Source of the DNA: Auanema rhodensis
Lineage: Eukaryota > Animalia > Nematoda
NCBI GenBank assembly: GCA_964057225.1
Contig: OZ059897.1
Coordinates: forward strand, 16,988,001-17,052,000
DNA: 64,000 nt
Reading direction: 5' to 3'
Shown: piece by piece, positions 45,401-63,775 of the stretch
Layout: every line of letters starts with the position of its first letter
Position numbering within the stretch: the stretch's first letter is position 1
Notes under the pieces: generated by a model
Told to the model about the DNA's origin: nothing
The model's database searches: none
What the model saw: only the letters and a program-made list of their open reading frames with translations
Made by a program: the position numbers and the translations under genes

Positions 45401-45921
45401 TTTTTTCTAGATGGCATTAGTGTGTATGTTACTTGGAAAGGCATTTATTCAAGGGGCTTTTAATATTTTGTATATTTTCACTTCCGAACTAAGCCCTACG
45501 GTAGTACGTAATACCGCTGTCGGAATTTCTTCTATGGTGATAATGCTTTATTGTTTAAAATCTAATATTTGTATTATTTAGATGGCAAGAATGGGTGCTG
45601 GAGCATCAGGATACATTGCGATCCTTAGTGATGTTACTTTAGCAATGGTTCCTATGCTTATATTTTCGATTTTTTCTTTATGTGCTGGAATATTGGTGAT
45701 GTTCCTACCAGAAACACAATATCTACCTCTCCCTGATACTATATGGGTATACTAATTTTTATGAGATTTCACCTCAAAGAATATTTTCTTTTAAGGATGC
45801 TGTAATGATGCGAACAAGAGCAAAATCACCTTGTGGCCATACTTCAAACACTTACGAGACAGACTCGTTGCAAGAAGAAGAATCATATCAAAAAGCAGAC
45901 ACAGATGTTGAGCAGAATTAG
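42497..45921 (+). CDS. SLC22/MFS organic cation transporter (oct-2-like)
   Basis: [11 protein letters not shown]; [10 protein letters not shown]; VSDRYGRK; ESPRWL; [11 protein letters not shown]; LPET...LPDT motifs. The 5' exons are less certain. Confidence 0.9.
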
Positions 45922-46357
45922 TAATTAGATTTAAAAAACAACAATAATAATAATCTACTGTGTAACTTTCTGAACAGCATTTTTTCATTTACGTTTTCTA
46001 TGGAATGATACAAATTTTCGGGTATTTCTGCACGTGTAAGCAGATAGTTGTGGAGCAATAGTATCGTTGTATGATCACACTGTCTATATAAAAGATGACA
46101 ATAAATATTTCTTCATTAATGTTTAAATGTTAAACTTTACAAAATAATGATATTGTTTGTAAATTGATATAAATTGTAAGGAAAAGCTGCAGTTAGTAGT
46201 AAAATTTGAATAATTTACATATGCAAAACGAGTCTTACAACGAAAGAATTCTAATCCCGATTTTCAATTTAGCGTCGTTTAGAATGTGTCCTAATCCATA
46301 AAACATATTAAATACCTTTTTAAATTAACTATGTTATAATAAACGTTCTAGTTTTAG

Positions 46358-49300
46358 ATGACGGAGTCTAGTGATCTTAGTTCCTGTAAATTAATTTTAG
46401 ACCAAGTATTAAATAGATGTCTTAACATCGAAACAAAGTCTCTAAAAGCAAGCTGTATAGGTAAATGTTGCATTGTTCATTTTAATTAAAATAATTTTAT
46501 AGATAACTCCTCTGCTAAAGAACTTATTATATTAGATGAAAATCTTCTAAGAGAACTTCTACAGCATCTCAATACTATTTCTTGTTTCAAATTCCTACAT
46601 ACATTACCTGAGGATGATTTAATACGAGTTATATTAGTTCTTGATTTTAATGTGAAATCAGTATTGAGCTATAGTGAAGAGGATTTCGTATGCAAATTTG
46701 ATATAAATTCGGTGTGATTATTAATAAGGGTATTTGTATTACATAAATATGTTTCTAGGATGCCCCTGATAGTTCTCTTCCTCTATTTAGAGGGTTGGAT
46801 GCATCAGTTGCGGTTTTGAAAATAATGACTTGTAATAATATGCCTATTAAAGTAATATTTTCTCTCTTATTGATAACTCAAATGTCTTTCCAGATTTTCA
46901 TGGAGGATTTGGTACAACGTATAGTCAATCTAATAAAGACTACCAATTCAAAATTAGTCATGCCATTAGTTCAAGCTAGCAGGCAGTCTGAGAGAAAAAA
47001 AGGTGATTTTAATAAACTAGCTTTAATTATCACAATCTACAGGTGCTAAGAGATCCAGGTCAAATGATCTAACTGTACCTATTATTCTCCAGCAAGTTTT
47101 TTCAAGAATCCAAGATATAGTAGGATCGCTAACTGAAATGGTAGTACTTGTATAATGTTGTAATTAAGATGTATTCAATTTAGATTCGTCTAAACATGCT
47201 AAATGAGAGTATCATCAGCTGCCTGGCTCAAGTAGGGATAGACTATTTTTTTTCTTCAAGTGTTCACGAATTGCAAACTCAGGTTAGCCCTGTCCTTTTC
47301 AATTTTATTAGTTGTTTTGCAGTTAATTTTCTTATTGGGCAACATTTTTGTGAATATTGACGAAGGCTTGCAAGTTGAGCTCATGAGAACAATTATGAGC
47401 TACTTATGTAACCCATTAATATGTAAAAAAGTTTGGCAAGCATATGAAAGTCCATCGTCAATATGCATTGAAGTTGAATTGCTTATACAAATTGTTCAAG
47501 CACTTGCATCGGTACTTAGTAATATTTACTTTTATTAACATATTGCATCAGATATCAAAACCAATTTCAAATGAGAAATCAAGTCCAACTACTAAAGATT
47601 TGAACGATTTTGTAAGTAGTAGACTTCGTCATGCTCAAAGATTGTTATCTTATTTGTTTCGTTTCTTCCTAATTGGGTATAGTGTAATTTATATACAGTA
47701 TAATATTGAACTAATTTTAATTAGATCAGAAGATGATTACCGGAAGTCTATTTTCAACAATATTGTTCATGATTTTCTATTGTTGTTGGATAGACCAGAG
47801 TACCCAGTTTCAACATTTTTTTTAACAGTGTTAGGAAGACACTTGATGGAATTATATAAGTGATGCCTGTATTTTTACCTAAATTATATTATTTGTTTTA
47901 GGAACAAAGCACTTGATATAGCTATTAGGACATATTGTTTAGATCTCATAGGAACTATTGCACTCCATATGTCTAAAACTGTCGATATGTCTAAGAGATC
48001 TTCTAAAACTGCAATTGATGTTTTTTAAGTACAGTTTTTTGCATTAATATGATATGGTTTTAGGAAATCGAATCTAAAATAAAAAATAGTTTGAAAGGTT
48101 CAAAGGAGGTATTCATTGTTTAGATAAGATTATTTAGATGTGAACTAAATTCCTTCAGAAATTAAATAAGACCCAAAGATTACAACAATCTCTAATTGAT
48201 TATTTAGCATTTTCAAAGGATAGTTGTATGATTGAGGTAAATTTTATTAGGATAATACTTCTGTAACGTCTTTCAGTTTGCTATGAAATATTATGCATCT
48301 GCCTGGCAATACCAGATCAAGCATCAGTTGCCTGATGCAGAACGGGTAAAAAAAAATAGCAAAAGAAAAGTTTAATTTTGTCAAATATTACAATATATTT
48401 CAAATTTAGTCCGAGGAACTCCCATCTTCTTTGCGGTTTCTACTCGCTTTATCTAATCCGAAATACATAAGGAAGCGTGTAAAGTAAAGCTTATTTTTTA
48501 ATTTTTATTATTATCATTTTTTAACAGAGTTGAGCCATATTTATTGTCTGATGATGAAGCTTATATAGTTGCTCGATATGTCACTACAGTGGGGGACGCT
48601 TATCTTAATTGCGAACCATTTATAAACTATGTAATAGGTGTTTTTGTTGTTTAAGTTATTAAGATTTTGTAGATTTTTCATGCTATTACTGCGGAATTAA
48701 TTCCTCTCAGGACAAAGGCTTTGAAATGTCTTTCGCATCTTGTGCAAAACTGTTCTGGTATTTTGAAGAAAGTTTGTCATACTGTTTGTATTTATTATAA
48801 TAATATATATATGGATATATAGGATTTTGTTGCCAATGCAATTCAAGAACGCTTGATAATTGATAGCAATGCATTGGTTAGAGAAGCAACTATTGAAGTG
48901 GTTGGAATCGCTGTCCTGAAAGATTACGAATTTCTTGATGTATATGAAAGTCAACTCCTTAGTAGACTTCAAGTAAGATTTGAGCATACCAATAGAACTT
49001 TTATTTATTTTAGGATACTTCCCTACTTGTGAGAAAACGTGTGGCGCGAGTCTTAAAGGCTATATGCGAACAGTATCCAACCAGTTCAAAGGTTTTCTCC
49101 TTTCTATGTTTTTTAACTGGCTTCTTTTATAGATACCGCGGTTTTTGTATAATATGTTATGCCGAATTGATGATGAAAAAACTCTTCAAGTTATCGTTCT
49201 AGATACTTTCTTCGCAAGATATTTTTTACATGACCAGGAGGAAGCTTATTATGTGCGATCAGTTAGTTGTATAATAATATTAAATCTGTATTGTCATCCG

Positions 49301-52153
49301 TACATCAGGCTACTGAATTGATCGCTATTGCTCAATGCTGTACTGCAAATGAAAAAGTATGCACATTTGAAGCTCTTTTAGAGTTGATGTTATCGAATTA
49401 CGAAAATGCTATGAATGGTTTTTCATGTTTCCATACACTTTGAGAGATTATTGTTTAGCCATTCCGAACATATCTGAACGTCTCATTGAATGCTTGAAGC
49501 CGTATAGGAAGAATTCATCAAGCGATGATCCGAAAAGTTTTATTTTCAGTATTATATGTATTCTATGCCGTTTTGGAATGGTACCACTTTATTTTTAGCA
49601 ATTAGATATGTTAAATTTTAGGTGATGCCAGAAGTCTTGGAAAATCATGTGGACTATGTGATTTGGTTTTTGGAGTATGCAATTGAGAGTAATGTTCAAC
49701 CAGCGGTTTGTTCAAATGCTACTTGTATTAGATACCTACAATGTTTCCAGGTAGTTCAAGATATAGTTCGGAGTATGGAACGATTGATACCGTACATAAA
49801 TACAACTCAGAAGTCATTCTATGATAGGTGTGTAATGATTAATTATTGTATATTAATTGTTAGCAAATAGGATTCATTCTGCTTTTCAAGTGTTGCTATA
49901 TGCTAAATCAAAAGGACTAATTTCCTTCGTAACAGCTTGTTTAGCTGAACTTTATAGAAAACAACCAAGTCCAGATAACCCAGTACTTATCGAATTCCTG
50001 AACTCTTTAGGTCTGTTTTCAATTATTAATATAAATTTTTATCTTCGGTATTAGCCTTATTGAACAGAATCAAAAAGCAGTTTGAAGAGGAATCAAATGA
50101 TCCTCTTCCTGAATCAATTGAAATCATTTTAAGGTTTTTCTTCATAAAAAAGTACAAGTTTATTTCAGTTTCAAGTTTAGAGCGTTTTTCTCCGTTGGAG
50201 TGTATTCTAGATATTTCAATTTTGATATAATTTTTGCCAATGATTCAAAAGCTCAAGAATGCTTATGCTTGGTTAGTTTGAATTGGCTTAAATGTTTGTG
50301 AATGCTTGTTTAGGGTTACAATTTCTCTGCTAATTCTCAGGAGGATCAACCACTCCGGTATGTATTTGAATGTGTTGTACCTTATTAGTTATTAAGACGA
50401 TTCCGTGACAATACGTATGGGCTCTTACTGTTTTTTGCTTCTCGGGGACATCCTGATTTTGCTGTAAACGCTTTGTTCTCATTAGGTGCAGCTTAACTAT
50501 TCCTCAAGCCATTCAACTGCATTTTAGGGCATTTATGTGTCACATATGCTGAGTATGTGCAGAGTTCAGCAATTCATAAGTTGTATATTGCTATACTAAG
50601 TGCTGATAATCGGAAATTATTATCAATGAAAATCCAGGTAACGTTACTGTATATGAGTATCTGTTTAATTTTTACAGACTCTTGCTAATATCAAGTTGTT
50701 TTTGGTATCCGAGGAGCAGAAGATCAGAGAATCTAAGATAGGCATGTATTTATATATATTCATAGTAATTTAGTATTTTTACTTCAGAAAAGGATGATAA
50801 CAATGAAGATGACTTGAAACAAATGGATTTGCCTGAAAATGGTGTAGGCTCTGTATTTATTCAATTGTTTTTCAAGTTCATACTTGCCTGTTATTTTAAC
50901 GCTAATGGAACTTTAAGAAAAACATCATCAGAGGTAAGATTATCACAATATCTGAAATATTTTTATTTTTTTTAGATTGTTAAAATTGCAATATGTCATG
51001 GCTTTGTAAACCCAGCTGTCTGTGCATCTGAGCTCATAGCAATGTCGTTGGATTCTGATGAGTTTATCAGAAATGAGACCATTGCTTTGCTAAAAGAAGT
51101 AAATAAGAAATATCCTGATTGTTTAATCGTAAGTTATTCTGAGACAAATAGAAAAAGTTAAATAATGCTAGGGAAAATCAGCGATTGGATGTTTAAAAGC
51201 ATATGAACTGTCTTGTTTGAAAGCTGCCGATGAAAAACAAGTTATTAGGGGATTTAATGAAGTCTCAAAAGAGAATGAGATCATTTTAACGTCTTCAATG
51301 TCTGATTATTACCAGTTATTTACTTCCTCCAAAGCTCATAGACGTCAATTTGTTAACATAATGCTAAGGTACATCATTGACAAATAATCGTTATAGATTT
51401 CATTTTTAGCTTGTTTTCTGAGAGTAATGCTCATAAAATATCGACAGGACAGTTAGTTTTCTTAGCTGATAACTTAATCGCTTTGCCGTTTGAGGTAAAA
51501 AATATATTAAAATGTATTTTGATTATATGTCTTCCAGGTGCTTGATGAACCTCTTTATGTTATAAAGCATATTGACGGGATTGTTAGTCTATCAGGACAA
51601 AATTTTTTGATTTACTTGAAGGAGAACGTTTTTCCAAAAAATTTGAGTAAAGAGAAAGAGGATGATATTCTTTTCACGGAAGAGGTTTTATTAGGTTTAT
51701 ATATATATCCATTTTTCTTTTCTATTACACATAATTTTATTACAGAGAATTTCCCAAAAAGTGAAGATTTGATTCGTGGTTTAATGGACCATGGAAAAGT
51801 TTGTATCATTCTCATGTATATGAAGAACTATCTTATGGGTCTCTATCGTTTGAGTGACAAGTTTGCCTTATATAAATACTATTGCTATGTATTTTATTCA
51901 GAAGAGTCCAGGGCTATTCTGCATCAGAGCCGAAACTTTATTTGAAACCTGTCAATAAAAAAGAGGTTTCTTTAGAGGAGTATAATAATGCTGTTAGCAT
52001 TTTCCATTCAAATGTATCAGAGCACAACTGGAAGAAAATGCTAGCCTGTTGCATATGCAAGGTATATTTAATGCATTTCCTAAGTAAATAAATATATTTC
52101 AGTTTCGTTCCACACTCTTGGCTCTAGAGCCCGATGAAATTGGTGATTTATGA
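46358..52153 (+). CDS. Divergent, N-terminally truncated Scc2/NIPBL cohesin-loader paralogue (HEAT core only)
   Basis: Exons align in order with the neighbouring scc-2: LRTKALKCL/LRTKAMKCL, VREATIEVVG/VREATIELLG, VRKRVARVLKAICEQYP/VRKRVIRIMREICEKYP, VLDEPLYVIKHIDGIVSLSGQ/VLDEPLYTIRQIDGIIALSGQ, FRSTLLAL/FRKMLLAL. Intron positions and phases are shared in the exons checked. Confidence 0.88.
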
Positions 52154-52757: not shown

Positions 52758-55700
52758 CTATTCTTCTTCCATTGGTTGGCTCTCACTAGCAGGTTCATCG
52801 TTTTCACTTTGACCACGATCAACATCTTCTTCATCGTCCTGTAATAGTAGAAATGTTTTAAATATAATATTTACTTTTTATCCTTACATCGCGCTCAGTA
52901 ACACCTGTTGTTACACCATCCTCATTTTCGTCGCCACCATCATCTTCTAAGCGATCCAGCGCTAGAAGCATTTTGCGGAACTTAAATAATAAGCATTTAT
53001 AGAAAAAAGGTTTCGCATATCTTACATTACAGATTTTGTGAGCAAGCTTATAATGTCCTGGTATTGTATTTCTTTCTTCGATTACTTCTGGTCGCATTTC
53101 TTCTAATGCAGAATGTGGATGAAACATAGGAATATTCCTTCGCGTGACTGCTTTTTCGTAAACCTTTGCAGCTTCAGATGGAGAGTACTCTTGAACTTTG
53201 CTGAAATTTTAATAGTTTAATTAAGTATTCATTAGTTAATCAACTTACACTTCAGTAAATCCATACAATTTCATCAAGAAATTTTTCAAATACAACAAAA
53301 TGAAACAAGCTTGACTGTTTACCATCAAATCAAACAATTCGCATTTGCTTTCAGGGAATCGTCCTAATTTTTTAATATTACTCTTTGGTTTTCAAAACGG
53401 CACAAACTGTATATATGATCGGGTTCAAATAATGAATCATCGTCTTCAGAACTCGAGAAGCCAGATATTAAGCGATCCTTGAATTGATTCAAAATAGATT
53501 GTCCTGACAGTGCTATGATGCCGTCAATTTGACGTATCGTATATAAAGGTTCATCAAGTACCTGAAAGAAAATATTTCCTCAAATAACAGGCTGAGCAAT
53601 ATACCTGGTAAGGAAACATAGCAATGTTATCAGCAACAAAAATCCACTCGGAAAGGGGTAACTTTTCTCGACTATCTTCGCTAAATAATCTTAAAGGAAA
53701 AAATACATATATGACAAATATTATTTATGTCCACCTGAGAACACTATTTAAAAATGATCTTCGATGAGACCTGTTCCCCCTCAAACTTTGGTACAATCCA
53801 CTAAGAATAGCTTGTCCATCATTTGAGAATCGAGGTAATCCGAACTGATCAAGGTTAGTGTGCGCTAATAAATGAGACAACAATAAATTCACATATTTTT
53901 AAATAATCTAACCATGCGCAGATAAAGAAGAAGAATCGCATATTCTTATTCCACGAATTATCGAAAACTTTTCTCTGTTAAATTGAGAATGCAACTTATA
54001 TGCAACTCTAATTCCGTTAATAGCTTTGCTCTGAAAAGAAAAACAATTTACGATGGAGAAAATTGGTTAACGTACTTGAACCATTCCCGCATATTTCGTG
54101 TCAATTTCTTTCAACAAATTCTCCACTTTATTTCGAATCGATACAATCGGATCCGTAGTCATAGCAACAAGAGTAGCAATCGAAGAACCAGGAGTAACTA
54201 GGCCTTGGGACAATGTGAGCCATGCAACCTAAAAATGGACTGTTTCGAACGAAGAGAAATTTCAGAAACATACCTGTACAGCAGACTGTCGAACTGCTTC
54301 ATTATTATTGAAATAGCAACTTAGTACATTCAGCCAATAAATTTGAATAACAGCAGAACTCATACCAGATCCAGCCAGTTCCATTTCTTTGAGATTCTGC
54401 TGATCTTTGGCTTTATCCCCTGTAGAAGTATATATAATTTAATAAGATGGGGAAACTTACATTCTTCGTTGCTCTTCATTAACTTTTTTTCCTCAGCTAA
54501 TAAAAACATTTCTAAGTTTTTCAAAGTCTGAATTTTCAACTGTAGATATTGAGGATCATTAGAAACTAATAATGTTTTATACATATGCTTTATCTCGCCT
54601 CGCCCAAGATATTGAGCATGGCGTGCACATAAATGTCCTAAACATCAAAGTAAATTTTCGAAAAATAAAAGGCAAAAAAACCTATTGATGAAATAGCTCT
54701 TAAACGAATTGATGACAAATGATTTCGAGAGAACGAGCTAAGAATGAAGAACACATTGTCTCGATACCGTCTATTTTCGGGCTTATCATCGGCAAGCTCA
54801 AGAGATTCTCCTGCTGCTGTTTGACATGGAGGCAAATTCACCTAAATCAAAATATATGTATATAAAATTAGAATATTAAAATAAAGTTACCACAACTAAA
54901 CTTCTTGCGGCTTCAGCATCATTCTCCAGCATAGTGTCAAAATCAAAATATCGGCATAACAGCCCAATAGCAAACAACGATCTGAACAAAATTTCGTGAT
55001 TCAACAAAAAACTTTAATGAAACCTCTGAAGAACTGGTAAAGCTGAAGGTGAAGGGGTAAATCTATCATTCTGCTGAAACGTCAACTGCATTGAATTCAA
55101 ATTTCTCAAAAAATAAAGAAATTTTTGAGCCATTGTTGTTTGCTTTCTAGGGAAATGATTGTATACTGCTGCTGCGCAAGCAACAACAGATACTACTATT
55201 GTAACTCCATTGGTCATCATCAAATTACTAAGAGATTCGTCAAGACTGGAAGGGAACATAAAATAACTAGCTTTTAGAATAAAAATTTACCCTTGAAGAA
55301 AAGCATCACTAGGGTGACTCATCAACGGAACAACACGTTCCAACATACAAATTACTTTATTTAAAACTGCTTGTTCACCATTAGAACGCACAGTCATCGA
55401 TAAATAAGGTTGTAGTGTTTCAGCATGTCGCACAAGAAGCTCAGGGCGAACCTCAAAAAAATAATGTTTTTGAATACTAATACTAAGAAACCTTGCTGAA
55501 CATGGAAAGAGTTGTTAAGGATGCTAATAGTCGTTCTTGATTCTCTTTCTGGTTTTGAAGTGATTCTTGATCTTCCGGATCCTCAGCATTTCTCGAACCA
55601 TCAGAAGCCATTTTCGTTTCCAAAGTCAGAATACTATCAACTAATGAATCCACAATTTGTTTGCTGGCTGCCAGCATGTTCTGTATTCAAAAATTGATAA

Positions 55701-58700
55701 AAAATCGAGAACTGAATTTACCTTATCGGCTGTTTTTAATAATGCTTGCAACAATTGCTCCAAAAAATCAATTGTACTTTCGTTTGCACATATTTGTGCA
55801 ACCAAAGTCATTTGCATTACCTGAAAAAAAATGAATGAGAATCTTCAAGATTTTCATTACTTTTTTGCAAAGAACATCCGCTGATCGTTCCGAACAAGGT
55901 TGGAACCATAGAGCCATAAAAGTTTCTTGGACCAACTTCTTTACTCCATCCTCATCGGTTATTCGACGGACCAATTTAGAAAGCATATCGGGGATCTATT
56001 TTTTTTAATTAACCAAAAACATAAATATCCTAGAAACCTGTTTATAGTTAGGATATTTTTCACAAATTTCTCTCATTATACGAATAACACGTTTTCGAAC
56101 AGCAGTTCCAGAATCCTAAATATTACTTTCAGCGTAATAGTAAAAATAGTAATGTACCTTGATTCTCTCAAGAAGAATACCATAATAATCAGGAATAAAT
56201 TCTTCTTTAACAAGTAAAAATTTTCCTAATAATTCAATAGTAGCTTCACGGACAGCAGCATTTGGATCAATCATTCGCGAATTTACAGCTAGTCTTACAT
56301 CAGGCTAAAAAATAATACAAAATATCACAAATATAAAATTAAAACATTTACCATTCCAAGAACTTCATAATCTGCTTCAATAATTTGAGTGAGGCATTTC
56401 ATCGCTTTTGTGCGTAAACTGACAGTACTTTCTACTTGAATCCCATATAGAATCTAGAAACAGAGCAAAATAAAAACAGATCAACTAATTTAACAAACTA
56501 TTTTTAGATAAGAGTCAAACGAATGAGTGAATTCTCTTCTAGATGCTAAGTATTTTACTGTCCAACTAGCATCACTGTCCAGCATAACATTGCCCGTTTT
56601 CCTGAATAGAAAATATATACAATAAGATTAAAAATAAAAATTGCCTGATATGTTCTGTTCGTTTTTTGACTTGTTTTTTATCTACTAGTTTAGTTAGAAA
56701 CTCTTTGTTAGTTTGTGCTTTTTCATTCATTCTTTCCATCTTTTTCTCAAGCTTCCTTTTATCCTGAGCAAATTTAAAAATTAAAAGTATAAATCAAATT
56801 GACTTACTTTTTCAGTTAGCTCAGTAGATTTATCAGACTTGAAGTTTTGCCTTGCTATATCTAGATCTTCAGCTGTTTCCTTATACCATTCGGCAGCATA
56901 GTATTTGATAGCATACTTAATTTAAAATTTTAGTTATTATATTTTACTTAAAAAACTTACATCTACACTAATATCATCACCCATTTTATCAACAAGGAAA
57001 TCAATTAAAGCTTGTTCCAGCTTTTTCAATCGATCACTTGCAGAAAACTAAAATTAAAATAGAGAAGAAAGATAGAGAATGGTATAATACTTCGCTAATA
57101 TCCACATCGGAAACATTTTCGAATTGGGGCTCTTCTTCATCATCATATATGATAGTTTTAACAACAATCTAAATAAGACAAAAAGTTCAAAACAATACTA
57201 GATAAATTAAACCTCTAGTCGTTTCTCAGAATCTTCAACTGCCGATTTCGCATCTTTACGTAGGCGCGCTGTTATAGATCCTAAGTAATCAAGACAGGCT
57301 TGACGAATTACTATATCAGTGGATTTTGCTCTATAAAGAATACCGTAATTCATATTGAAACCTCTGCAAAAAACCTGTAATATTTAACTAATAATGTTCC
57401 TAGAATATTCAGAATGAATTCAGCAGCTGGGAATGGTGGTTTATGTAATGCAGCCAAAAGGTCTTGTAGGAAAGCATCAAAGAGGCGTCTATAATCTTCT
57501 TCACCGTCTGTTTTACTTCCTTTACATGAACATCTAAAAAAAGAAGTTAAAGCATGTATTCTAGAAAACGATTACTTGGCTAAAAATCCATTGAGAAATG
57601 TTCCAGCAAGTCTTTGAGCATCTTTAAAAGAATCTTTCACAATTGAATCAGGATTAATTTCATTCTTATTATCTTCGTCGTCGTTTCTTTTTCTTTTGGG
57701 CATCTTGAATAATAACAAATATCGAAAAAAAAATATTTAAGAAAAACCTTAACCGCAGATTGAATAAGTTGTAAGATTAAAACAGTTGTATTGCTTATCC
57801 ATTGTTCTGGCCCGAGACGGTAGCTATTGTTTGTATTCTTACCAGGAGGTAAACGATGAAGAGAATTCAGAATGTCTGTGAGGATTCCTACCCTTACTCC
57901 TTCCGAGCTAATAGCAAAAATATTGGATGCGAGAAGCATAGCCTGCGATTTTAAGTAATGAATTGAAATATACCAATATATATATATGTACCTGTCGCTG
58001 TAACTCTCCTACATTGCTGACAAAAAACGAAGCTACGGCCATACTTGACAAATGATGGATACTAGTCTCTGGTAGTAATTGCACACGAACCTAAATAATA
58101 CCGTTATATGAACAATTTCGAACTCGACTCACTAGTTCTGAGAAACATCCAACAAGATCCGCAATTCTATCATATATCTTTTGAACTGTATGGGACCGAT
58201 TACTAACTCCGGCTTTTCTTTTTCTTCGAGGATCCTCAGCTGAAACAGAATATATATTATAACAATAAAATAAAACTTGCCTTTTTGCTTCTTGGAATTA
58301 TTGGAGCGAAAGACACTATCAGAAGCAGGAAATATGATATGGTTTAGATATTGCTTACAAAGATTAATGGCTCTCTCAATAGTATCCTCGATAAAAACCT
58401 AAATATCATAAGGTTTGGGCATTGGTTAATTTTGCATACTTGTTTTGGCATTTTATAGCTAGTCATAATCATTAAAGCTGTGCAAGCAGCATCAGCTGCG
58501 CGAGCAAGTCGCTCATGTATTAATTCTCTAAAAGCAACATCCTCCTCCTCAGCATTCTATAAACATTTACAATATACGTTAAAACTGTGTGGTATCTAAC
58601 CTCTTCGAGTATTACAGGAACTAAAAGCCTAGATCCGTCTTGACTTATGACATCCTTCATGTTTCTCTCAAGCATAGTTTCTAACTTGACCAAACGATCC

Positions 58701-61639
58701 ACAGGTACTCTATTAAGTTTTTTCCAACTTTTTAGCTTTTGTGTTTGGTTTCTCAGATCATCAAGTACAGCTCTATCTATTAGAAGTTCTTGACTAACAT
58801 CATCGTCTTCTTCTTCTTCATCTCAAATCAATTGGAGAATATTAAAAGATATTGTTATATATAATACCTGTTTTATTATTGCAGGCCATAAGCACATCCA
58901 TGTCTTCAACTTGATCTAAAATTTGATCAACTAAAAGCATAAATCTATTGAATGAGTCATTCTCAGCCATAACCTAAAAAATAAAATTAGTGTTATTTAT
59001 GTTTTGGAACAAACATCATTATTCCAACATTCCTGAATATTTTCATCTCCTCGTCTGCGTTTACGTTTCTCCAATCTTTTTCTCTGTCTTTCATTCCATT
59101 CTAACTCCCGTTGATGAATTACTAAAGAATTAATTTAAGAAAATAATAAAGATTTAGATCATACCTTCAGTGGGAGTAGGGGGTCGTTCTTCTCGTTCTT
59201 CCTTTTTTCTCTTCTTCTTCTTATCATAAAATTTATTTTCCTCATCACTACCCGATTCTTCTTCCATTTTCTGTTCTGAAGCTTCCATTTTTGAAATCAT
59301 TTCTATATCTTGTTGTTCCGCCTGTTCTTCTTCCAATGTCTTCGTTCTATTTCGGCGCCTTCTCCCTTGAGTAGGGTCGAAGTAGTCAGTTAAAGAATCA
59401 AATAAACATTCAACCTTAAATATACAGAAGTGAAATATTAAATAAAACACTGAGCATACCATATCTTTCTTTTTACGGTGAGTTTGAGCTTTTGGTTGTT
59501 TACCAACACTAGCCATTTGTCTTCTTAACTTTATTGCTTCCTGATCAAGTTGGACCTGCACTTTTTGAGGTTCCTTATTAGGTACTGATGGAACACTATT
59601 TGTGACAGGTCCCCCCAGAACATGAGACATCTTAAAATGACAAATACATTACAATAAGAATAAAAATGATAAACCGAAGGTCTGTTTAAGTCATCTTCCA
59701 TTTCATTTAATAGGTGTTCAGTTTCAGCTATTCCCATATTATGCTCCGGTTCAACGTCAAGAGCCTATTATTTTAATAATAAAAATAATGAAAAAAAATC
59801 TCACATTGCAATTATACTCCATAACGTCTTTTATTAATGGTGGCATTTGCGCTAAAGGCAAATCATTTGTTTCGGCCAACTCACCGTGGTGATCCAAGCG
59901 AGTTCGTCTGGAGTTGAAAATAATAAGTAAATTAATGAAATCAGTACAAACATATCACGAATATCCACTTTAGATAAAGCTTGTGAAATCATTTTCACAA
60001 TATCTGGACTAGAATTATCCAGTATGGGCAGTGCATCGTCAGAGCAAACACAAGTTAAGCTCGATTTTTCGAGACTTTCGCTAGGAAAAGGAATCACTCC
60101 CATAACTGTAACAGTAATAGATAAATTTGTTATATAACTGCGAAAATTGTTTACAATTATTGATAAAATGAGTGGCCACTAACGCAACAGGATGTCTAAA
60201 ATTTTCCATTCTAGTTGCGCATTCCTGCTTCAGCTGAAAATAACCAAAAATAAGAAACTAACCGAATTAATAAACAACAAACCCTTTCATCCTCACGCTG
60301 TCTTTGCAGTTGCTCATCCCTAATTTTCATCAATTTCTCTCGTTCAATTCTTTCAGCTTCTTCCCTTTTCTTTTTTTCTTCCTCTAATCTCAACGCTTCC
60401 TCCTGAATATTAGAGCACTACATTTCATAAAATGTAGAATTTAGTACCTGTTGTCGAAGCATTTCTTGGTGCTCCTTTTCTCTTTGAATCATCAATTCGC
60501 GTTGTTTGCGCTGCTGTTCTTCACGTTCAGCCAATTCCTGAGAAAAAAAAATTAATCTTTTATAACTTAGCGCAGACAAAACCTTCTGTCGTTTTCTATT
60601 CAACTCTTCCTGGCGTTTTATTTCCATTTGCCTACTTTGCTCTTCCAACAGACGTTGCTGCTGTTCATGCTAAATATTGATAATAAGTAAAATATTGAAT
60701 ACAAACAATACCAAAGTTAACTGTTGTTGAGGCGGCATAGATTGCTGAGAAGACTGAGAATGAGAAGGTTGTTGCCTAGCTTGGGGTTGCATCTGGTGTT
60801 GATGTTGGTGACTTTGTATATTGCTTTGCGCAGGAATAGACGACAAGACTTGACCAATTTGGTTTGGAATTGCTTGGGGTATAGAGTTTTGATGTAGTTG
60901 GTGTTGCGACGTTAGCTGAGTTTGATGCGGTTGATGAGTACTAGCATGTGGAGGTTGGTGAGTACTAGCATGAGGAGGTTGATGAGTACTAGCATGAGAA
61001 GGTTGATGAGTACTAGCGTGTGTAGGTTGATGAGATGATGAATGCTGATTTTGATGTTGCTGTTGGTGAGGTAATTGGTGAAGCGGTTGATGTTGGTGTT
61101 GTGATTGGTGTTGAGATTGCTGTTGTAATTGAGGTTGATCTTGCATGAATCTTTGATGATTATGCTGCAATGGCTGCTGTTGGACAGCTTGCTGTGATAA
61201 AACCTGCTGTGGATGCATCTAAATCTTATAGTGAAATTAGTTAACAAAAAGGTAGTATAATACATGTTGTTGAGGCTGTTGAAACATTGGAATTTGTTGC
61301 TGCATCATAAGATTATTATATTGCTGCTGTTGAAAAGGTTCCATGTTTATCATCTTTAAAAGAACGCTTACTAACAAGTAAAAAAACTAACATACTTGAT
61401 TCTGGCCATAAAATTGGAATTGATTCATATATTGTTGTTGTAAAATCATCTGAATGTGAATGGTCCTATACGTATAAACAGCATTCAAAATAACATACCT
61501 GATTATAATGATCTTGAGGATTCATCATTTGCTGTTGGCCATGACCAGGGATATTCATATTATTTTGGTAATTCTGGAATCATACATTTAGTAAACAAAC
61601 AGAAAATAATTTTCATACTTGTATATCACGTGGATCCAT
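52758..61639 (-). CDS. scc-2: Canonical cohesin loader SCC-2/PQN-85 (Nipped-B/NIPBL), many exons
   Basis: MDP start, Gln/His-rich N-terminus, charged coiled-coil region, then HEAT core with LRTKAMKCL, VREATIELLG, VRKRVIRI, LQPYL, GLVTPGSSIATLVAM, ADNIAMFPY and DEPLY; acidic tail. Confidence 0.95.
60929..61034. repeat. 24-bp coding tandem repeat, about 4.4 copies, encoding HQP(P/S/T)HAST in the scc-2 N-terminus
   Basis: GGTTG(A/G)TGAGTACTAGC recurs at 60929, 60953, 60977 and 61001. Confidence 0.9.
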
Positions 61640-62059: not shown

Positions 62060-63775
62060 TTAGGCGAAGTAAGAGTCCAACACTGGTTCCCCTTGATCAA
62101 TCATCCCTTTGTTCATAAGTCCAAACTCATTCCCATTGAAATTATCCATATTTATAGTGGTAGCACCTATGTTTTTATCAAGCAGAGCATTTTTACTTAA
62201 ACTTTTCTTAGATGAAAGAGATGGAGAAGTTTTAAGAGGAGTGACTGTTTTAGATTCTACTGTCACGATGCTTTTTGCCTTATAGCACATTGTTATTAAT
62301 ACAGCAATAAGAACTAAGATTACTATACTTAGAGAGGTTGTTATGATAAAAGCATTTCTGAAAAAAATAGATTATAAAATATATACAATAACACAAACTT
62401 CATCAAAAACGTTGTAAAAGGATTTGTGGTCACATTTCCAGTAACAGCTGAAAAAAACACAAACTATTAGGATTCTATAGCTTATCTCACATTTTCTCAT
62501 AGTTGTTTCCGAATTTATATTTGCATTCTCTATCACATTATGAATCTCAATAGGAATACTGTTGTTAACAATAGTTGGTGTTGAAGTTTTAATTGTTATA
62601 AATGGTGCTACTGATCCGGGTATTGTAGAATTAAGTGTCAAAAGTTCTCCTGATTCGTACACATTCAATGTAGCTTCAGAAGTTGCGATCGTAGTGAAAT
62701 ATGTAGGATTGTTACTCCTCTTTTTCATAGTTTGAGTTGTGATAGTTGTTGTAGTTACGGGAGCTTTGATGGCTATCTTACGATTCGGAGTTGTGGTGAT
62801 TCTGGTGGTTCTGATAGCTGTTAAAGTTGTGGTAGTGCTTGACCTTCTGGTAGTAGTTGGAGTTGTGGTAGTGGTAGGAGTTGTGGTAGTGGTAGGAGTT
62901 GTGATAGTTGTAGGAGTTGTGGTAGTTGTAGGAGTTGTGGTAGTGGTAGGAGTTGTGGTAGTTGTAGGAGTTGTGGTAGTTGTAGGAGTTGTGGTAGTTG
63001 TAGGAGTTGTGGTAGTTGTAGGAGTTGTGGTAGTTGTAGGAGTTGTGGTAGTTGTAGGAGTTGTGGTAGTGGTAGGAGTTGTGGTAGTTGTAGGAGTTGT
63101 GGTAGTGGTAGGAGTTGTGGTAGTTGTAGGAGTTGTGGTAGTTGTAGGAGTTGTGGTAGTTGTAGGAGTTGTGGTAGTTGTAGGAGTTGTGGTAGTTGTA
63201 GGAGTTGTGGTAGTTGTAGGAGTTGTGGTAGTTGTAGGAGTTGTGGTAGTTGTGGTAGTTGTAGGAGTTGTAGGAGTTGGAGTTGGAGTTATGATGGTCC
63301 TCGAAGTAGCAGATGCTACCATGGAAGCTGAAGCATTTTTATTTCTGTAATAGTAGTGGAAACTTTACTTGAATCTGCAGAGATTGATTTTACGATAGTG
63401 GGAGTTCTAGTTGTAGTAGTGCTATAGGTTATTAATGATATAGATGTAGTTGGGATATGAAAGGGTTTTGATTGCTCTACTGTTAAAGTACCTAATGATG
63501 CAGTGTCGCCTAAATCTTATGGTGGTAATGCTCGAAATATTTGAATATTGATATTATAGGCTTGAACTCTAACCTGACGGCGAGTTATTAATATTTGCTA
63601 GACTACTCTGATCATTCAAATGTTCCTTTTCTGCATCATTTTCATCTAGTTGGTTAGCATTTTCTTGAAAAGATTGCCGAACAACTAAAGGTGCTAATAA
63701 CAATAGATGAATTAACGCTAAACTCAAAAGGAATTAGAATATTTCACTGTTGTGAACCTTACAAAACAACAGCAT
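62060..63775 (-). CDS. Type-I transmembrane mucin-like protein: signal peptide, PTTTTT repeat stalk, single TM, short tail
   Basis: Predicted start [16 protein letters not shown]; long Thr/Pro exon; last exon [27 protein letters not shown]...VLDSYFA*. The 5' splicing is tentative. Confidence 0.8.
62859..63255. repeat. 18-bp coding minisatellite GGAGTTGTGGTAGT(T/G)GTA, about 22 near-identical copies, encoding PTTTTT on the minus strand
   Basis: Unit read directly; copies differ mainly at one synonymous position. Confidence 0.95.

What the first reader, a model, noticed from the sequence alone, without database searches (positions are those of the whole stretch)
46351..46690. The paralogue begins at an internal scc-2 exon: a natural 'Scc2C' lacking the N-terminal targeting region
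Seen: the first exon MTESSDLSSCKLILDQVLN... matches the canonical internal exon VMAENDSFNRFMLLVDQILD... (minus strand, near 58870-58974). Both follow a TTTTAG acceptor and end in a phase-1 intron. Only 436 bp separate this ATG from the transporter's stop codon, so there is no room for the 2.7 kb of Gln-rich and charged N-terminal exons. The acidic C-terminal tail is also missing. Known: in yeast and human, the Scc2 N-terminus binds Scc4/MAU2 for chromatin targeting, and the C-terminal HEAT part alone suffices to stimulate cohesin in vitro. Inference: a former cis-splice acceptor became the trans-splice site and an internal Met became the start. The product would be a MAU-2-independent loader or a competitor of SCC-2/PDS-5.
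Basis: partly seen in the sequence, partly recalled or inferred. Interest (0 to 1): 0.8.

Follow-up and report, generated by a model that had tools for sequence, protein, structure and literature searches.

The report
Naturally N-terminally truncated cohesin-loader paralogue
A roundworm genome carries, next to its normal cohesin-loader gene (scc-2/NIPBL), a second, expressed and conserved copy that starts exactly where the folded part of the protein begins, so it lacks the segment that binds the partner MAU-2; it is a natural version of the shortened loader that laboratories build by hand.

Summary
The + strand gene (ATG 46358, stop 52153, 38 exons, 1399 aa) is a diverged Scc2/NIPBL paralogue of the convergent canonical gene (61639-52758, 51 exons, about 2220 aa).

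- **Where it starts.** Its Met1 aligns with Met665 of the canonical protein. Exon 1 (103 nt) matches canonical exon 16 (106 nt). Both end in a phase-1 intron that splits an Asp codon G|AT. 25 of the 37 paralogue introns are shared exactly.
- **RNA.** Spliced contigs from four runs of one study carry the whole ORF. They begin 2-7 nt upstream of the ATG, at the TTTTAG acceptor, and none joins an upstream exon.
- **Orthologue.** Auanema sp. JU1783 has an orthologue (CAI4229224.1, 1391 aa, 37 introns) that also starts at CAG|ATG.
- **MAU-2 block.** The canonical N-terminus holds the block homologous to NIPBL residues 11-107. Both paralogues lack it.
- **Structure.** The orthologue's residue 1 superposes on NIPBL residue 1194, the start of the aligned range in 6WG3 (Z 27.6).
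- **Not shown.** Trans-splicing fits but is unproven. The function (MAU-2-independent activator or competitor) is untested.

I found no paper describing such a paralogue.

The parts
46358..52153 (+). Truncated Scc2/NIPBL paralogue, CDS from ATG to TGA: 38 exons, 37 introns of 39-51 nt, 1399 aa
   Evidence: Model built from the RNA joints and contig anchors and from a spliced alignment of orthologue P0002. It agrees with all eight contig anchor points checked. One contig of 4277 nt (run X4) holds 7 nt, the whole 4200-nt ORF and about 70 nt of 3' UTR.
46351..46357 (+). gttttAG acceptor abutting the ATG: candidate trans-splice site. Its TAG is an in-frame stop
   Evidence: The contigs of 3 runs begin at about 46351 and of 1 run at about 46356. 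Auanema JU1783 has tttttCAG|ATG at the same place.
46358..46460 (+). Exon 1 (103 nt, 34 codons plus 1 nt). It encodes the first helix and is homologous to canonical exon 16
   Evidence: In the AlphaFold model of the orthologue, residues 2-23 form a helix with pLDDT 82-87.
46461..46502 (+). Intron 1, GT..AG, 42 nt, phase 1, splitting the Asp codon G|AT
   Evidence: The 5-nt overlap (TATAG) at the start of the next contig piece fixes the donor at 46461.
46503..46711 (+). Exon 2 (209 nt), homologous to the canonical exon 58821-58601
   Evidence: Contig piece 46498-46710 in all four runs. blastp gives 31% identity, E 3.7e-4.
45922..46357 (+). 436-nt spacer between the transporter's stop and the paralogue's ATG. 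No coding exon and no match to the canonical N-terminus
   Evidence: The transporter contigs end at 46050-46099, and depth is zero over 46100-46299 in all four runs. tblastn of canonical residues 1-664 finds nothing here.
50742..50787 (+). GC..AG intron of the paralogue
   Evidence: Joint 50739->50786 seen in all four runs. It reads GC..AG with the cut moved +2.
50976..51128 (+). Exon 32, part of the Nipped-B_C domain
   Evidence: Pfam PF12830 at 34.2 bits, above the gathering score of 26.4, E 3.3e-8.
52758..61639 (-). Canonical scc-2/pqn-85 gene: ATG 61639, stop TAG 52760-52758, 51 exons, about 2216-2220 aa, Gln-rich N-terminus and acidic C-terminal tail
   Evidence: Spliced alignments of P0031, P0022 (Haemonchus) and P0051 (C. 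elegans PQN-85) agree on the introns, and the ORF stays open. No RNA was laid on this gene.
58868..58973 (-). Canonical exon 16 (106 nt, starts at residue 664, V-M-A-E-N-D-S-F...), the counterpart of paralogue exon 1. A phase-0 intron (59014-58974) precedes it and a phase-1 intron (58867-58822) follows
59726..60212 (-). Exons encoding canonical residues 353-470, homologous to the MAU-2-binding N-terminus of NIPBL (residues 11-107). The paralogue has no counterpart
   Evidence: An HMM of this block from nematodes hits frog, urchin and insect NIPBL N-termini at E 1e-12 to 2e-7, and the paralogues at E 0.14 and 0.75. MAU-2 binding was mapped to delangin residues 1-139 (PMC1484498).

Best explanation
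The + strand gene is a functional, fast-evolving paralogue of the cohesin loader SCC-2/NIPBL. It arose by a partial DNA-level duplication of the part of the gene that begins in intron 15 of the parent.

Shown here:
- It keeps the parent's exon-intron layout from exon 16 onward.
- It is transcribed and correctly spliced.
- Its mRNA ends at the acceptor that abuts an ancient internal Met, which now serves as the start codon.
- It encodes only the HEAT-repeat 'hook' (equivalent to human NIPBL from residue 1194 to about 2620). It lacks the Gln-rich and charged N-terminal 664 residues, which include the MAU-2/Scc4-binding block, and it lacks the acidic C-terminal tail.
- It has been kept under purifying selection in at least two rhabditid species.

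Inferred:
- The orphaned 3' splice site, having no upstream donor, acts as an outron and receives a spliced leader. In nematodes this is the default fate of such a site.
- The protein binds cohesin (kleisin and the SMC heads) as Scc2C/NIPBL-C does and stimulates its ATPase without MAU-2, so it works without the canonical chromatin-targeting module.
- About 30% of the family's otherwise invariant residues have changed, so a specialised role is likely, for example in the germline, in meiosis or with a particular kleisin.
For: Paralogy and layout:
- Collinear six-frame matches between the two genes.
- 31% identity over 1389 aligned residues. Met1 aligns with Met665. 25 of 37 introns are identical in position and phase, and 3 more lie within 1-3 alignment columns.
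- Many exon lengths are equal across the window paralogue, the JU1783 paralogue and the canonical gene.

Expression and 5' end:
- 34 paralogue splice joints by count (14 of the 15 listed are its own; 20 more were not listed).
- One 4277-nt contig holds the full ORF.
- All four runs' contigs begin 2-7 nt upstream of the ATG, with zero depth further upstream.

Conservation:
- Auanema sp. JU1783 CAI4229224.1 has 1391 aa, 37 introns and starts at CAG|ATG. An in-frame stop lies 30 nt upstream in the sequence printed.
- Nei-Gojobori proportions are pN 0.34 against pS 0.75.
- 69 of 98 (window) and 64 of 98 (JU1783) residues invariant in 23 canonical sequences are kept, against 31% overall identity.

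Family:
- Nipped-B_C at 34.2 bits for a single window exon and 105.8 bits for the orthologue.
- phmmer E 6e-88 to NIPBL chain 6wg3_E.

Boundary:
- Model residues 1-450 align to NIPBL 1194-1667, Z 27.6, rmsd 2.8 A over 373 residues.
- The MAU-2 block is present in the canonical copy and absent in the paralogues.

Literature:
- Scc2C suffices for cohesin loading in vitro (PMC6527865).
- Human NIPBL lacking its MAU-2-binding end still loads cohesin (bioRxiv 10.1101/477752).
- mau-2 RNAi in C. elegans is not lethal, whereas pqn-85 RNAi is (PMC1484498).

This genome has SL1 gene arrays (scan notes; not tested here).
Against: - Contigs cannot prove an RNA start, and all four runs come from one study.
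- I could not read the 2-7 letters upstream of the ATG, so no spliced leader was seen.
- Exon 1 on its own is barely similar to the canonical exon.
- About 30% of the family-invariant residues are lost, 24 of them in both species. Pfam Cohesin_HEAT is not detected in the orthologue. Loader activity may therefore be altered or lost.
- In yeast, Scc2C fails to load cohesin in vivo (PMC6527865).
- In JU1783 the gene is not next to a canonical scc-2, so the tail-to-tail layout is not conserved.
- The age of the duplication is unresolved. The long branch sits at the base of the nematode sequences, and the AU test does not reject a recent origin (p 0.44).
Confidence: 0.75

Rival explanations
1. Same truncated protein, opposite role. 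It occupies the kleisin site shared by SCC-2 and PDS-5 but activates the ATPase poorly. It would then act as a competitor or brake on loading and loop extrusion, not as a loader.
For: 29 of 98 family-invariant residues are changed in the window copy, 24 of them in both species, including 14 shared substitutions. The branch is very long. Cohesin_HEAT is not detected in the orthologue. Yeast Scc2C is inactive in vivo (PMC6527865).
Against: 70% of the invariant residues are kept. The full hook and Nipped-B_C are retained. I mapped no specific catalytic-interface residue, so nothing points to a dead activator.
Confidence: 0.25
2. The gene has further 5' exons (coding or not) that the contigs miss, for example alternative first exons that break the assembly at the acceptor. 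The protein would then not be truncated in all isoforms.
For: Contig ends do not show RNA ends. A branch in the assembly graph at a shared acceptor would end contigs at one place in every run.
Against: There is no depth over 46100-46299 and no joint into 46358 in any of the four runs. No N-terminal homology occurs elsewhere in the window or in L001. The upstream neighbours differ between the two species: an MFS transporter here and a Methyltransf_22 gene there. The sequence upstream of the ATG is not conserved, while the coding sequence is. Spliced-leader variants would cause the same graph branch.
Confidence: 0.07
3. It is a decaying partial duplicate, transcribed but without function.
For: It evolves fast: 48% identity between the two species' copies, against 71% between the canonical copy and its nearest database relative.
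Against: The ORF of about 1400 codons is open across 37 correctly spliced introns in two species whose synonymous sites are saturated. pN is well below pS. Invariant residues are kept far above background.
Confidence: 0.05

Closest known systems
Canonical SCC-2/PQN-85 (Scc2, Mis4, Nipped-B, NIPBL) cohesin loader
   Same: Same family and fold. It has the HEAT-repeat hook and the Nipped-B_C domain, 31% identity to the neighbouring canonical copy, and most intron positions are shared.
   Different: It lacks the first 664 residues: the Gln-rich part, the MAU-2-binding block and the charged linker. It also lacks about 40 acidic C-terminal residues. About 30% of the family-invariant residues are changed, and it evolves much faster.
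Engineered Scc2C / NIPBL-C (human NIPBL 1163-2804) used for in vitro loading, cryo-EM and loop extrusion
   Same: The N-terminal boundary is nearly the same. The aligned range begins at NIPBL residue 1194 of 6WG3, 31 residues inside the construct. Scc2C suffices for loading on naked DNA in vitro (PMC6527865).
   Different: This is a natural gene kept by selection, not a laboratory construct. It is diverged in sequence and also shortened at the C-terminus. Its activity is untested.
NIPBL deltaN made by alternative translation initiation in human cells (Parenti et al., bioRxiv 10.1101/477752)
   Same: An N-terminally truncated loader without the MAU-2-interaction domain, which still loads near-normal amounts of cohesin.
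   Different: The human protein comes from the same gene through a downstream start codon after a mutation. It also keeps most of the long N-terminal region. Here a separate gene encodes only the hook.
Full-length NIPBL duplicates (zebrafish nipbla/nipblb; two bee copies seen)
   Same: Duplicated loader genes within one genome.
   Different: Those copies are full length (2127-2184 aa in the bee). I found none that is truncated to the hook.

Membership tests
Scc2/Nipped-B/NIPBL family | Nipped-B_C domain (Pfam PF12830) above the gathering score | tested here: met
   Window exon 50976-51128 alone scores 34.2 bits against a cut-off of 26.4. Orthologue P0002 scores 105.8 bits.
Scc2/Nipped-B/NIPBL family | HEAT-repeat hook homologous to solved Scc2/NIPBL structures | tested here: met
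   By sequence, P0002 residues 38-1273 match 6wg3_E at E 6e-88, and also 5t8v and 6yuf_D. By fold, the model of P0002 1-450 against 6wg3_E 1194-1667 gives Z 27.6, rmsd 2.8 A over 373 residues. The next unrelated rows score Z 14 or less. This was tested on the orthologue; the window copy was tested exon by exon only.
Scc2/Nipped-B/NIPBL family | N-terminal Scc4/MAU-2-binding segment | tested here: not met
   A profile of canonical residues 353-470 hits NIPBL residues 11-107 in other animals at E 1e-12 to 2e-7. It scores E 0.14 and 0.75 in the two paralogues. The canonical neighbour has the segment. Its absence defines the variant and does not exclude family membership.
Scc2/Nipped-B/NIPBL family | Cohesin_HEAT repeat (Pfam PF12765) | tested here: inconclusive
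   It was not reported for P0002, which shows only a generic HEAT hit of 21.8 bits below the 23.5 cut-off at residues 627-652. Canonical nematode proteins carry the domain.
Scc2/Nipped-B/NIPBL family | Stimulates cohesin ATPase and loads cohesin on DNA | not testable with these tools
   This needs purified proteins or genetics.
SL trans-spliced nematode mRNA (outron-derived 5' end) | Consensus 3' splice site with no upstream donor, directly before the start codon | tested here: met
   gttttAG|ATG in the window and tttttCAG|ATG in JU1783. No upstream joint appears in the RNA contigs.
SL trans-spliced nematode mRNA (outron-derived 5' end) | Spliced-leader letters on the transcript's 5' end | tested here: inconclusive
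   The contigs carry 7 nt (3 runs) or 2 nt (1 run) before the ATG. Their letters were not shown and no loose end was listed.
PDS5 (the other kleisin-binding HEAT hook; considered as an alternative family) | Best sequence and fold match to PDS5 | tested here: not met
   Pds5 (5frp_A) scores Z 12.8 against 27.6 for NIPBL. The sequence hits in the PDB are all Scc2/NIPBL/Mis4.

The most novel reading that the evidence does not exclude
Rhabditid nematodes of the Auanema group run a second, dedicated cohesin loader or loop-extrusion activator that needs no MAU-2 and has no chromatin-targeting N-terminus. It was created in one step, when a partial gene duplication left an intron acceptor to be captured by spliced-leader trans-splicing. 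It has since specialised, for instance for germline or meiotic cohesin or for the unusual chromosome behaviour of these worms. That would be a natural experiment separating the catalytic module of Scc2 from its targeting module.
Probability: 0.35. Interest if true: 0.8.

Novelty: new variant of a known kind. Interest (0 to 1): 0.62.

Why it matters
How much of cohesin loading and loop extrusion needs the Scc4/MAU-2 targeting module is still debated. Yeast Scc2C works in vitro but not in vivo, while human cells tolerate NIPBL without its MAU-2-binding end.

A gene that evolution has cut within about 30 residues of the boundary biochemists chose, and has then kept for a long time in at least two species, gives a genetic handle on that question in an animal. 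It can be knocked out, localised and assayed next to the full-length copy.

It also offers a clean example of how nematode trans-splicing could let a partial duplicate that begins inside an intron become a working gene at once. That step is not yet shown here.

Tried and rejected
- **Naive ORF and splice-site chaining.** It gave a wrong, short model. With wide intron limits it gave thousands of solutions. I settled the model with RNA anchors plus a spliced alignment of the orthologue.
- **Large profile search.** The search with one paralogue exon found only 16 relatives, with no copy of the window's own protein and only one paralogue-type protein, from Auanema JU1783.
- **Word search with that protein.** It added nothing, so how widely the paralogue occurs remains open.
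- **Dating the duplication by tree.** The paralogue pair sits on a very long branch at the base of the nematode sequences. The AU test does not reject a position beside the window's canonical copy (p 0.44) or inside Rhabditina (p 0.56).
- **Synteny with the Auanema locus.** There is none outside the gene itself.
- **SL1 sequence in the window.** No match at up to 3 mismatches.
- **Exon-1 profile test.** Marginal for the window copy and null for the Auanema copy.
- **PDS5-type identity.** Rejected.
- **The joined model.** The joined 1399-aa model was built only inside local scripts, for alignment, intron mapping and trees. It was never sent to a search, fold or look-up tool. Those tools received single exons by reference, or the orthologue P0002.
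Full report
**What is in the sequence**

The window is AT-rich (about 30% GC) and its introns are 39-57 nt long in the two gene models built here. Six-frame comparison shows two collinear, convergent genes that resemble each other at 28-49% identity exon by exon. One lies on the + strand from about 46.36 to 52.15 kb, the other on the - strand from about 61.64 to 52.76 kb.

The + strand ORF starts with an ATG at 46358. This ATG follows gttttAG directly, and the TAG of that acceptor is an in-frame stop. The upstream same-strand gene gives a weak MFS_1 hit and ends with TAG at 45919-45921.

**RNA evidence**

Four runs of one study hold half of the sampled words of the region. Their contigs are spliced, so they derive from mRNA.

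- 35 joints fall in 45700-51699. One is in the transporter, which leaves 34 for the paralogue. Fifteen were listed, 14 of them the paralogue's own.
- All listed joints are GT..AG, except one that reads GC..AG once the cut is shifted by 2 (50742-50787).
- The transporter's contigs end at 46050-46099, and depth is zero over 46100-46299.
- The paralogue's contigs begin about 7 nt (three runs) or about 2 nt (one run) upstream of the ATG. I worked this out from the record coordinates of the piece 46498-46710 and the 5-nt overlap TATAG, which fixes the first donor at 46461.
- No joint or loose end links 46358 to anything upstream.
- One contig of 4277 nt carries 7 nt, the complete 4200-nt ORF and about 70 nt of 3' UTR.

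Contigs cannot prove an RNA start, and I could not see their first letters. A spliced leader is therefore consistent with the data but not shown. Earlier notes of this scan report SL1 gene arrays in this genome, including a variant leader. I did not test those notes.

**Gene models**

I combined the contig anchors with a spliced alignment of the orthologue. This gives 38 exons, 37 introns and 1399 residues, with the stop at 52151-52153. The last intron (52062-52102) rests on homology of the C-terminal motif only.

The canonical gene was modelled with three guide proteins that agree on the introns. It has its ATG at 61639, 51 exons, its stop at 52760-52758 and 2216-2220 residues. Its N-terminus is Gln-rich, as in C. 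elegans PQN-85, and its tail is acidic. No RNA was laid on this gene.

**The junction the finding is about**

In a pairwise alignment the paralogue's Met1 falls on canonical Met665. The two proteins are 31% identical over 1389 aligned positions.

- Canonical exon 16 (58973-58868, 106 nt) opens in phase 0 with Val-Met.
- Paralogue exon 1 is 103 nt, exactly one codon shorter. The two acceptors are therefore offset by 3 nt and are not identical.
- Both exons end in a phase-1 intron that splits an Asp codon as G|AT.
- 25 of the 37 paralogue introns coincide exactly in position and phase with canonical introns, and three more lie within 1-3 alignment columns.
- Many exon lengths are the same in the window paralogue, the Auanema paralogue and the canonical gene.

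The duplication was therefore at the DNA level and began inside, or at the end of, parental intron 15.

Taken alone, exon-1 similarity is weak. It scores 3.5 bits against a profile of 23 canonical sequences, and 11 of 2000 shuffles reach that score. The Auanema exon 1 is not significant. The multiple alignment shows that the canonical exon carries a motif conserved from nematodes to vertebrates. The Met at this position is shared by most nematodes and by frog, urchin and sawfly.

**An orthologue elsewhere**

A profile-free search with one exon found CAI4229224.1 of Auanema sp. JU1783 (1391 aa, 'unnamed protein product').

- Its residue 1 aligns with 46358.
- Its gene has 37 introns and nearly the same exon lengths.
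- It starts at tttttCAG|ATG, with an in-frame stop 30 nt upstream (read from the sequence).
- The sequence upstream of the ATG is unrelated, while the coding sequence downstream is conserved.
- Its neighbours differ from those in the window, and no canonical scc-2 lies within 10 kb.

The two copies are 48% identical. Nei-Gojobori proportions are pN 0.34 against a saturated pS of 0.75. The ORF has therefore been maintained by selection over a long time. The word search added no further members.

**What is missing and what is kept**

*The MAU-2 block.* Canonical residues 353-470 form a block conserved among nematode SCC-2 proteins. An HMM of this block hits residues 11-107 of frog, urchin and insect NIPBL at E 1e-12 to 2e-7. 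It finds nothing in either paralogue (E 0.14 and 0.75). MAU-2 binding was mapped to delangin residues 1-139 (PMC1484498). The canonical copy thus has the MAU-2-binding type of N-terminus and the paralogue does not.

*The hook.* The orthologue matches the NIPBL chain of 6WG3 at E 6e-88 over residues 38-1273. An AlphaFold model of its first 450 residues has mean pLDDT 79. Residues 2-23, which correspond to exon 1, form a confident helix. The model superposes on NIPBL residues 1194-1667 with Z 27.6 and rmsd 2.8 A over 373 residues. That is far above unrelated helical repeats (Z 14 or less) and above Pds5 (Z 12.8).

The 1642-residue chain 6wge_E has exactly the length of NIPBL 1163-2804. That these are the construct's limits is my recollection. 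On that basis the natural protein starts 31 residues inside the laboratory 'NIPBL-C' boundary, at the first NIPBL residue covered by the structural alignment.

*Domain and invariant residues.* A single window exon reaches the Nipped-B_C gathering score. The paralogue keeps 69 of 98 residues that are invariant in 23 canonical sequences; the Auanema copy keeps 64. In 24 cases both copies have lost the residue.

*The C-terminus.* The paralogue stops eight residues after the conserved L-A-L-E. The canonical protein continues for about 40 mostly acidic residues.

**Mechanism**

*Shown.* This is an expressed, spliced and conserved gene for the hook alone.

*Inferred from established nematode biology.* A 3' splice site without an upstream donor behaves as an outron and is trans-spliced. 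A duplicate that begins in an intron would therefore yield an mRNA starting with the next exon, and the conserved internal Met would become the start codon.

*Inferred from the literature on engineered fragments.*
- The hook carries the cohesin and DNA contacts and suffices for loading in vitro (PMC6527865).
- Human cells load cohesin with an NIPBL that lacks its MAU-2-binding end (10.1101/477752).
- mau-2 RNAi is not lethal in C. elegans.

The most likely role is therefore a MAU-2-independent activator of cohesin, probably specialised, given its rate of change. The main rival is a competitor that occupies the kleisin site without activating. Hidden 5' exons and a dead duplicate are both unlikely, for the reasons listed under the rival explanations.

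**Age and novelty**

The tree puts the paralogue pair on a very long branch at the base of the nematode sequences. This placement is probably an artefact. The AU test rejects neither a position beside the window's canonical copy (p 0.44) nor one inside Rhabditina (p 0.56). The duplication is at least as old as the split between the window's species and Auanema JU1783.

Full-text searches found no description of a truncated Scc2/NIPBL paralogue.

**Limits**

- All RNA comes from one study and is available only as contigs.
- The window's own joined protein was analysed only in local scripts. Remote tools received single exons or the orthologue.
- The canonical gene model has no RNA support here.

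Noticed in passing
window 45700-46357: The upstream MFS-type transporter lies on the same strand. Its RNA contigs end at 46050-46099, only about 260 nt before the paralogue's acceptor. This spacing would fit a nematode operon with SL2-type trans-splicing of the downstream gene.
   Followed up: no
window 46351-46357: The paralogue's contigs start at the same base, 7 nt before the ATG, in three of four runs, and 2 nt before it in the fourth. A fixed end like this could mark a branch in the assembly graph between leader variants, or between leader and unspliced RNA. The letters were not visible, so it stays unexplained.
   Followed up: partly
window 50742-50787 (+); 58280-58240 and 56644-56602 (-): GC-AG introns. 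One in the paralogue is supported by RNA joints in all four runs. Two in the canonical gene are predicted by the homology-guided model only.
   Followed up: partly
window 62375-63364 (-): A long ORF just upstream of canonical scc-2 encodes a Thr/Pro-rich mucin-like repeat (many TTTTTP units). It is a separate gene and not part of scc-2.
   Followed up: no
window 60670-61220 (-): The canonical N-terminus contains an exon of about 500 nt that is very rich in Gln, His and Pro, with repeated HQP(S/P)HAST units. This matches the prion-like Q/N character that gave C. elegans pqn-85 its name.
   Followed up: no
L001 (Auanema sp. JU1783, CALQYR020007446.1) 1-25779: In JU1783 the paralogue sits after a Methyltransf_22 gene and a PXA/RGS/PX sorting-nexin gene. 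Nothing resembling canonical scc-2 lies within 10 kb downstream, so the tail-to-tail pair seen in the window is not conserved, or the gene has moved.
   Followed up: partly
window 46980-47060 (+): A basic patch (...ERKK-G-AKRSRS...) spans the exon 4/5 junction of the paralogue. It is conserved in the Auanema copy and aligns with a basic loop of NIPBL. It is a candidate nuclear localisation signal, which a protein lacking the N-terminal region would need.
   Followed up: no
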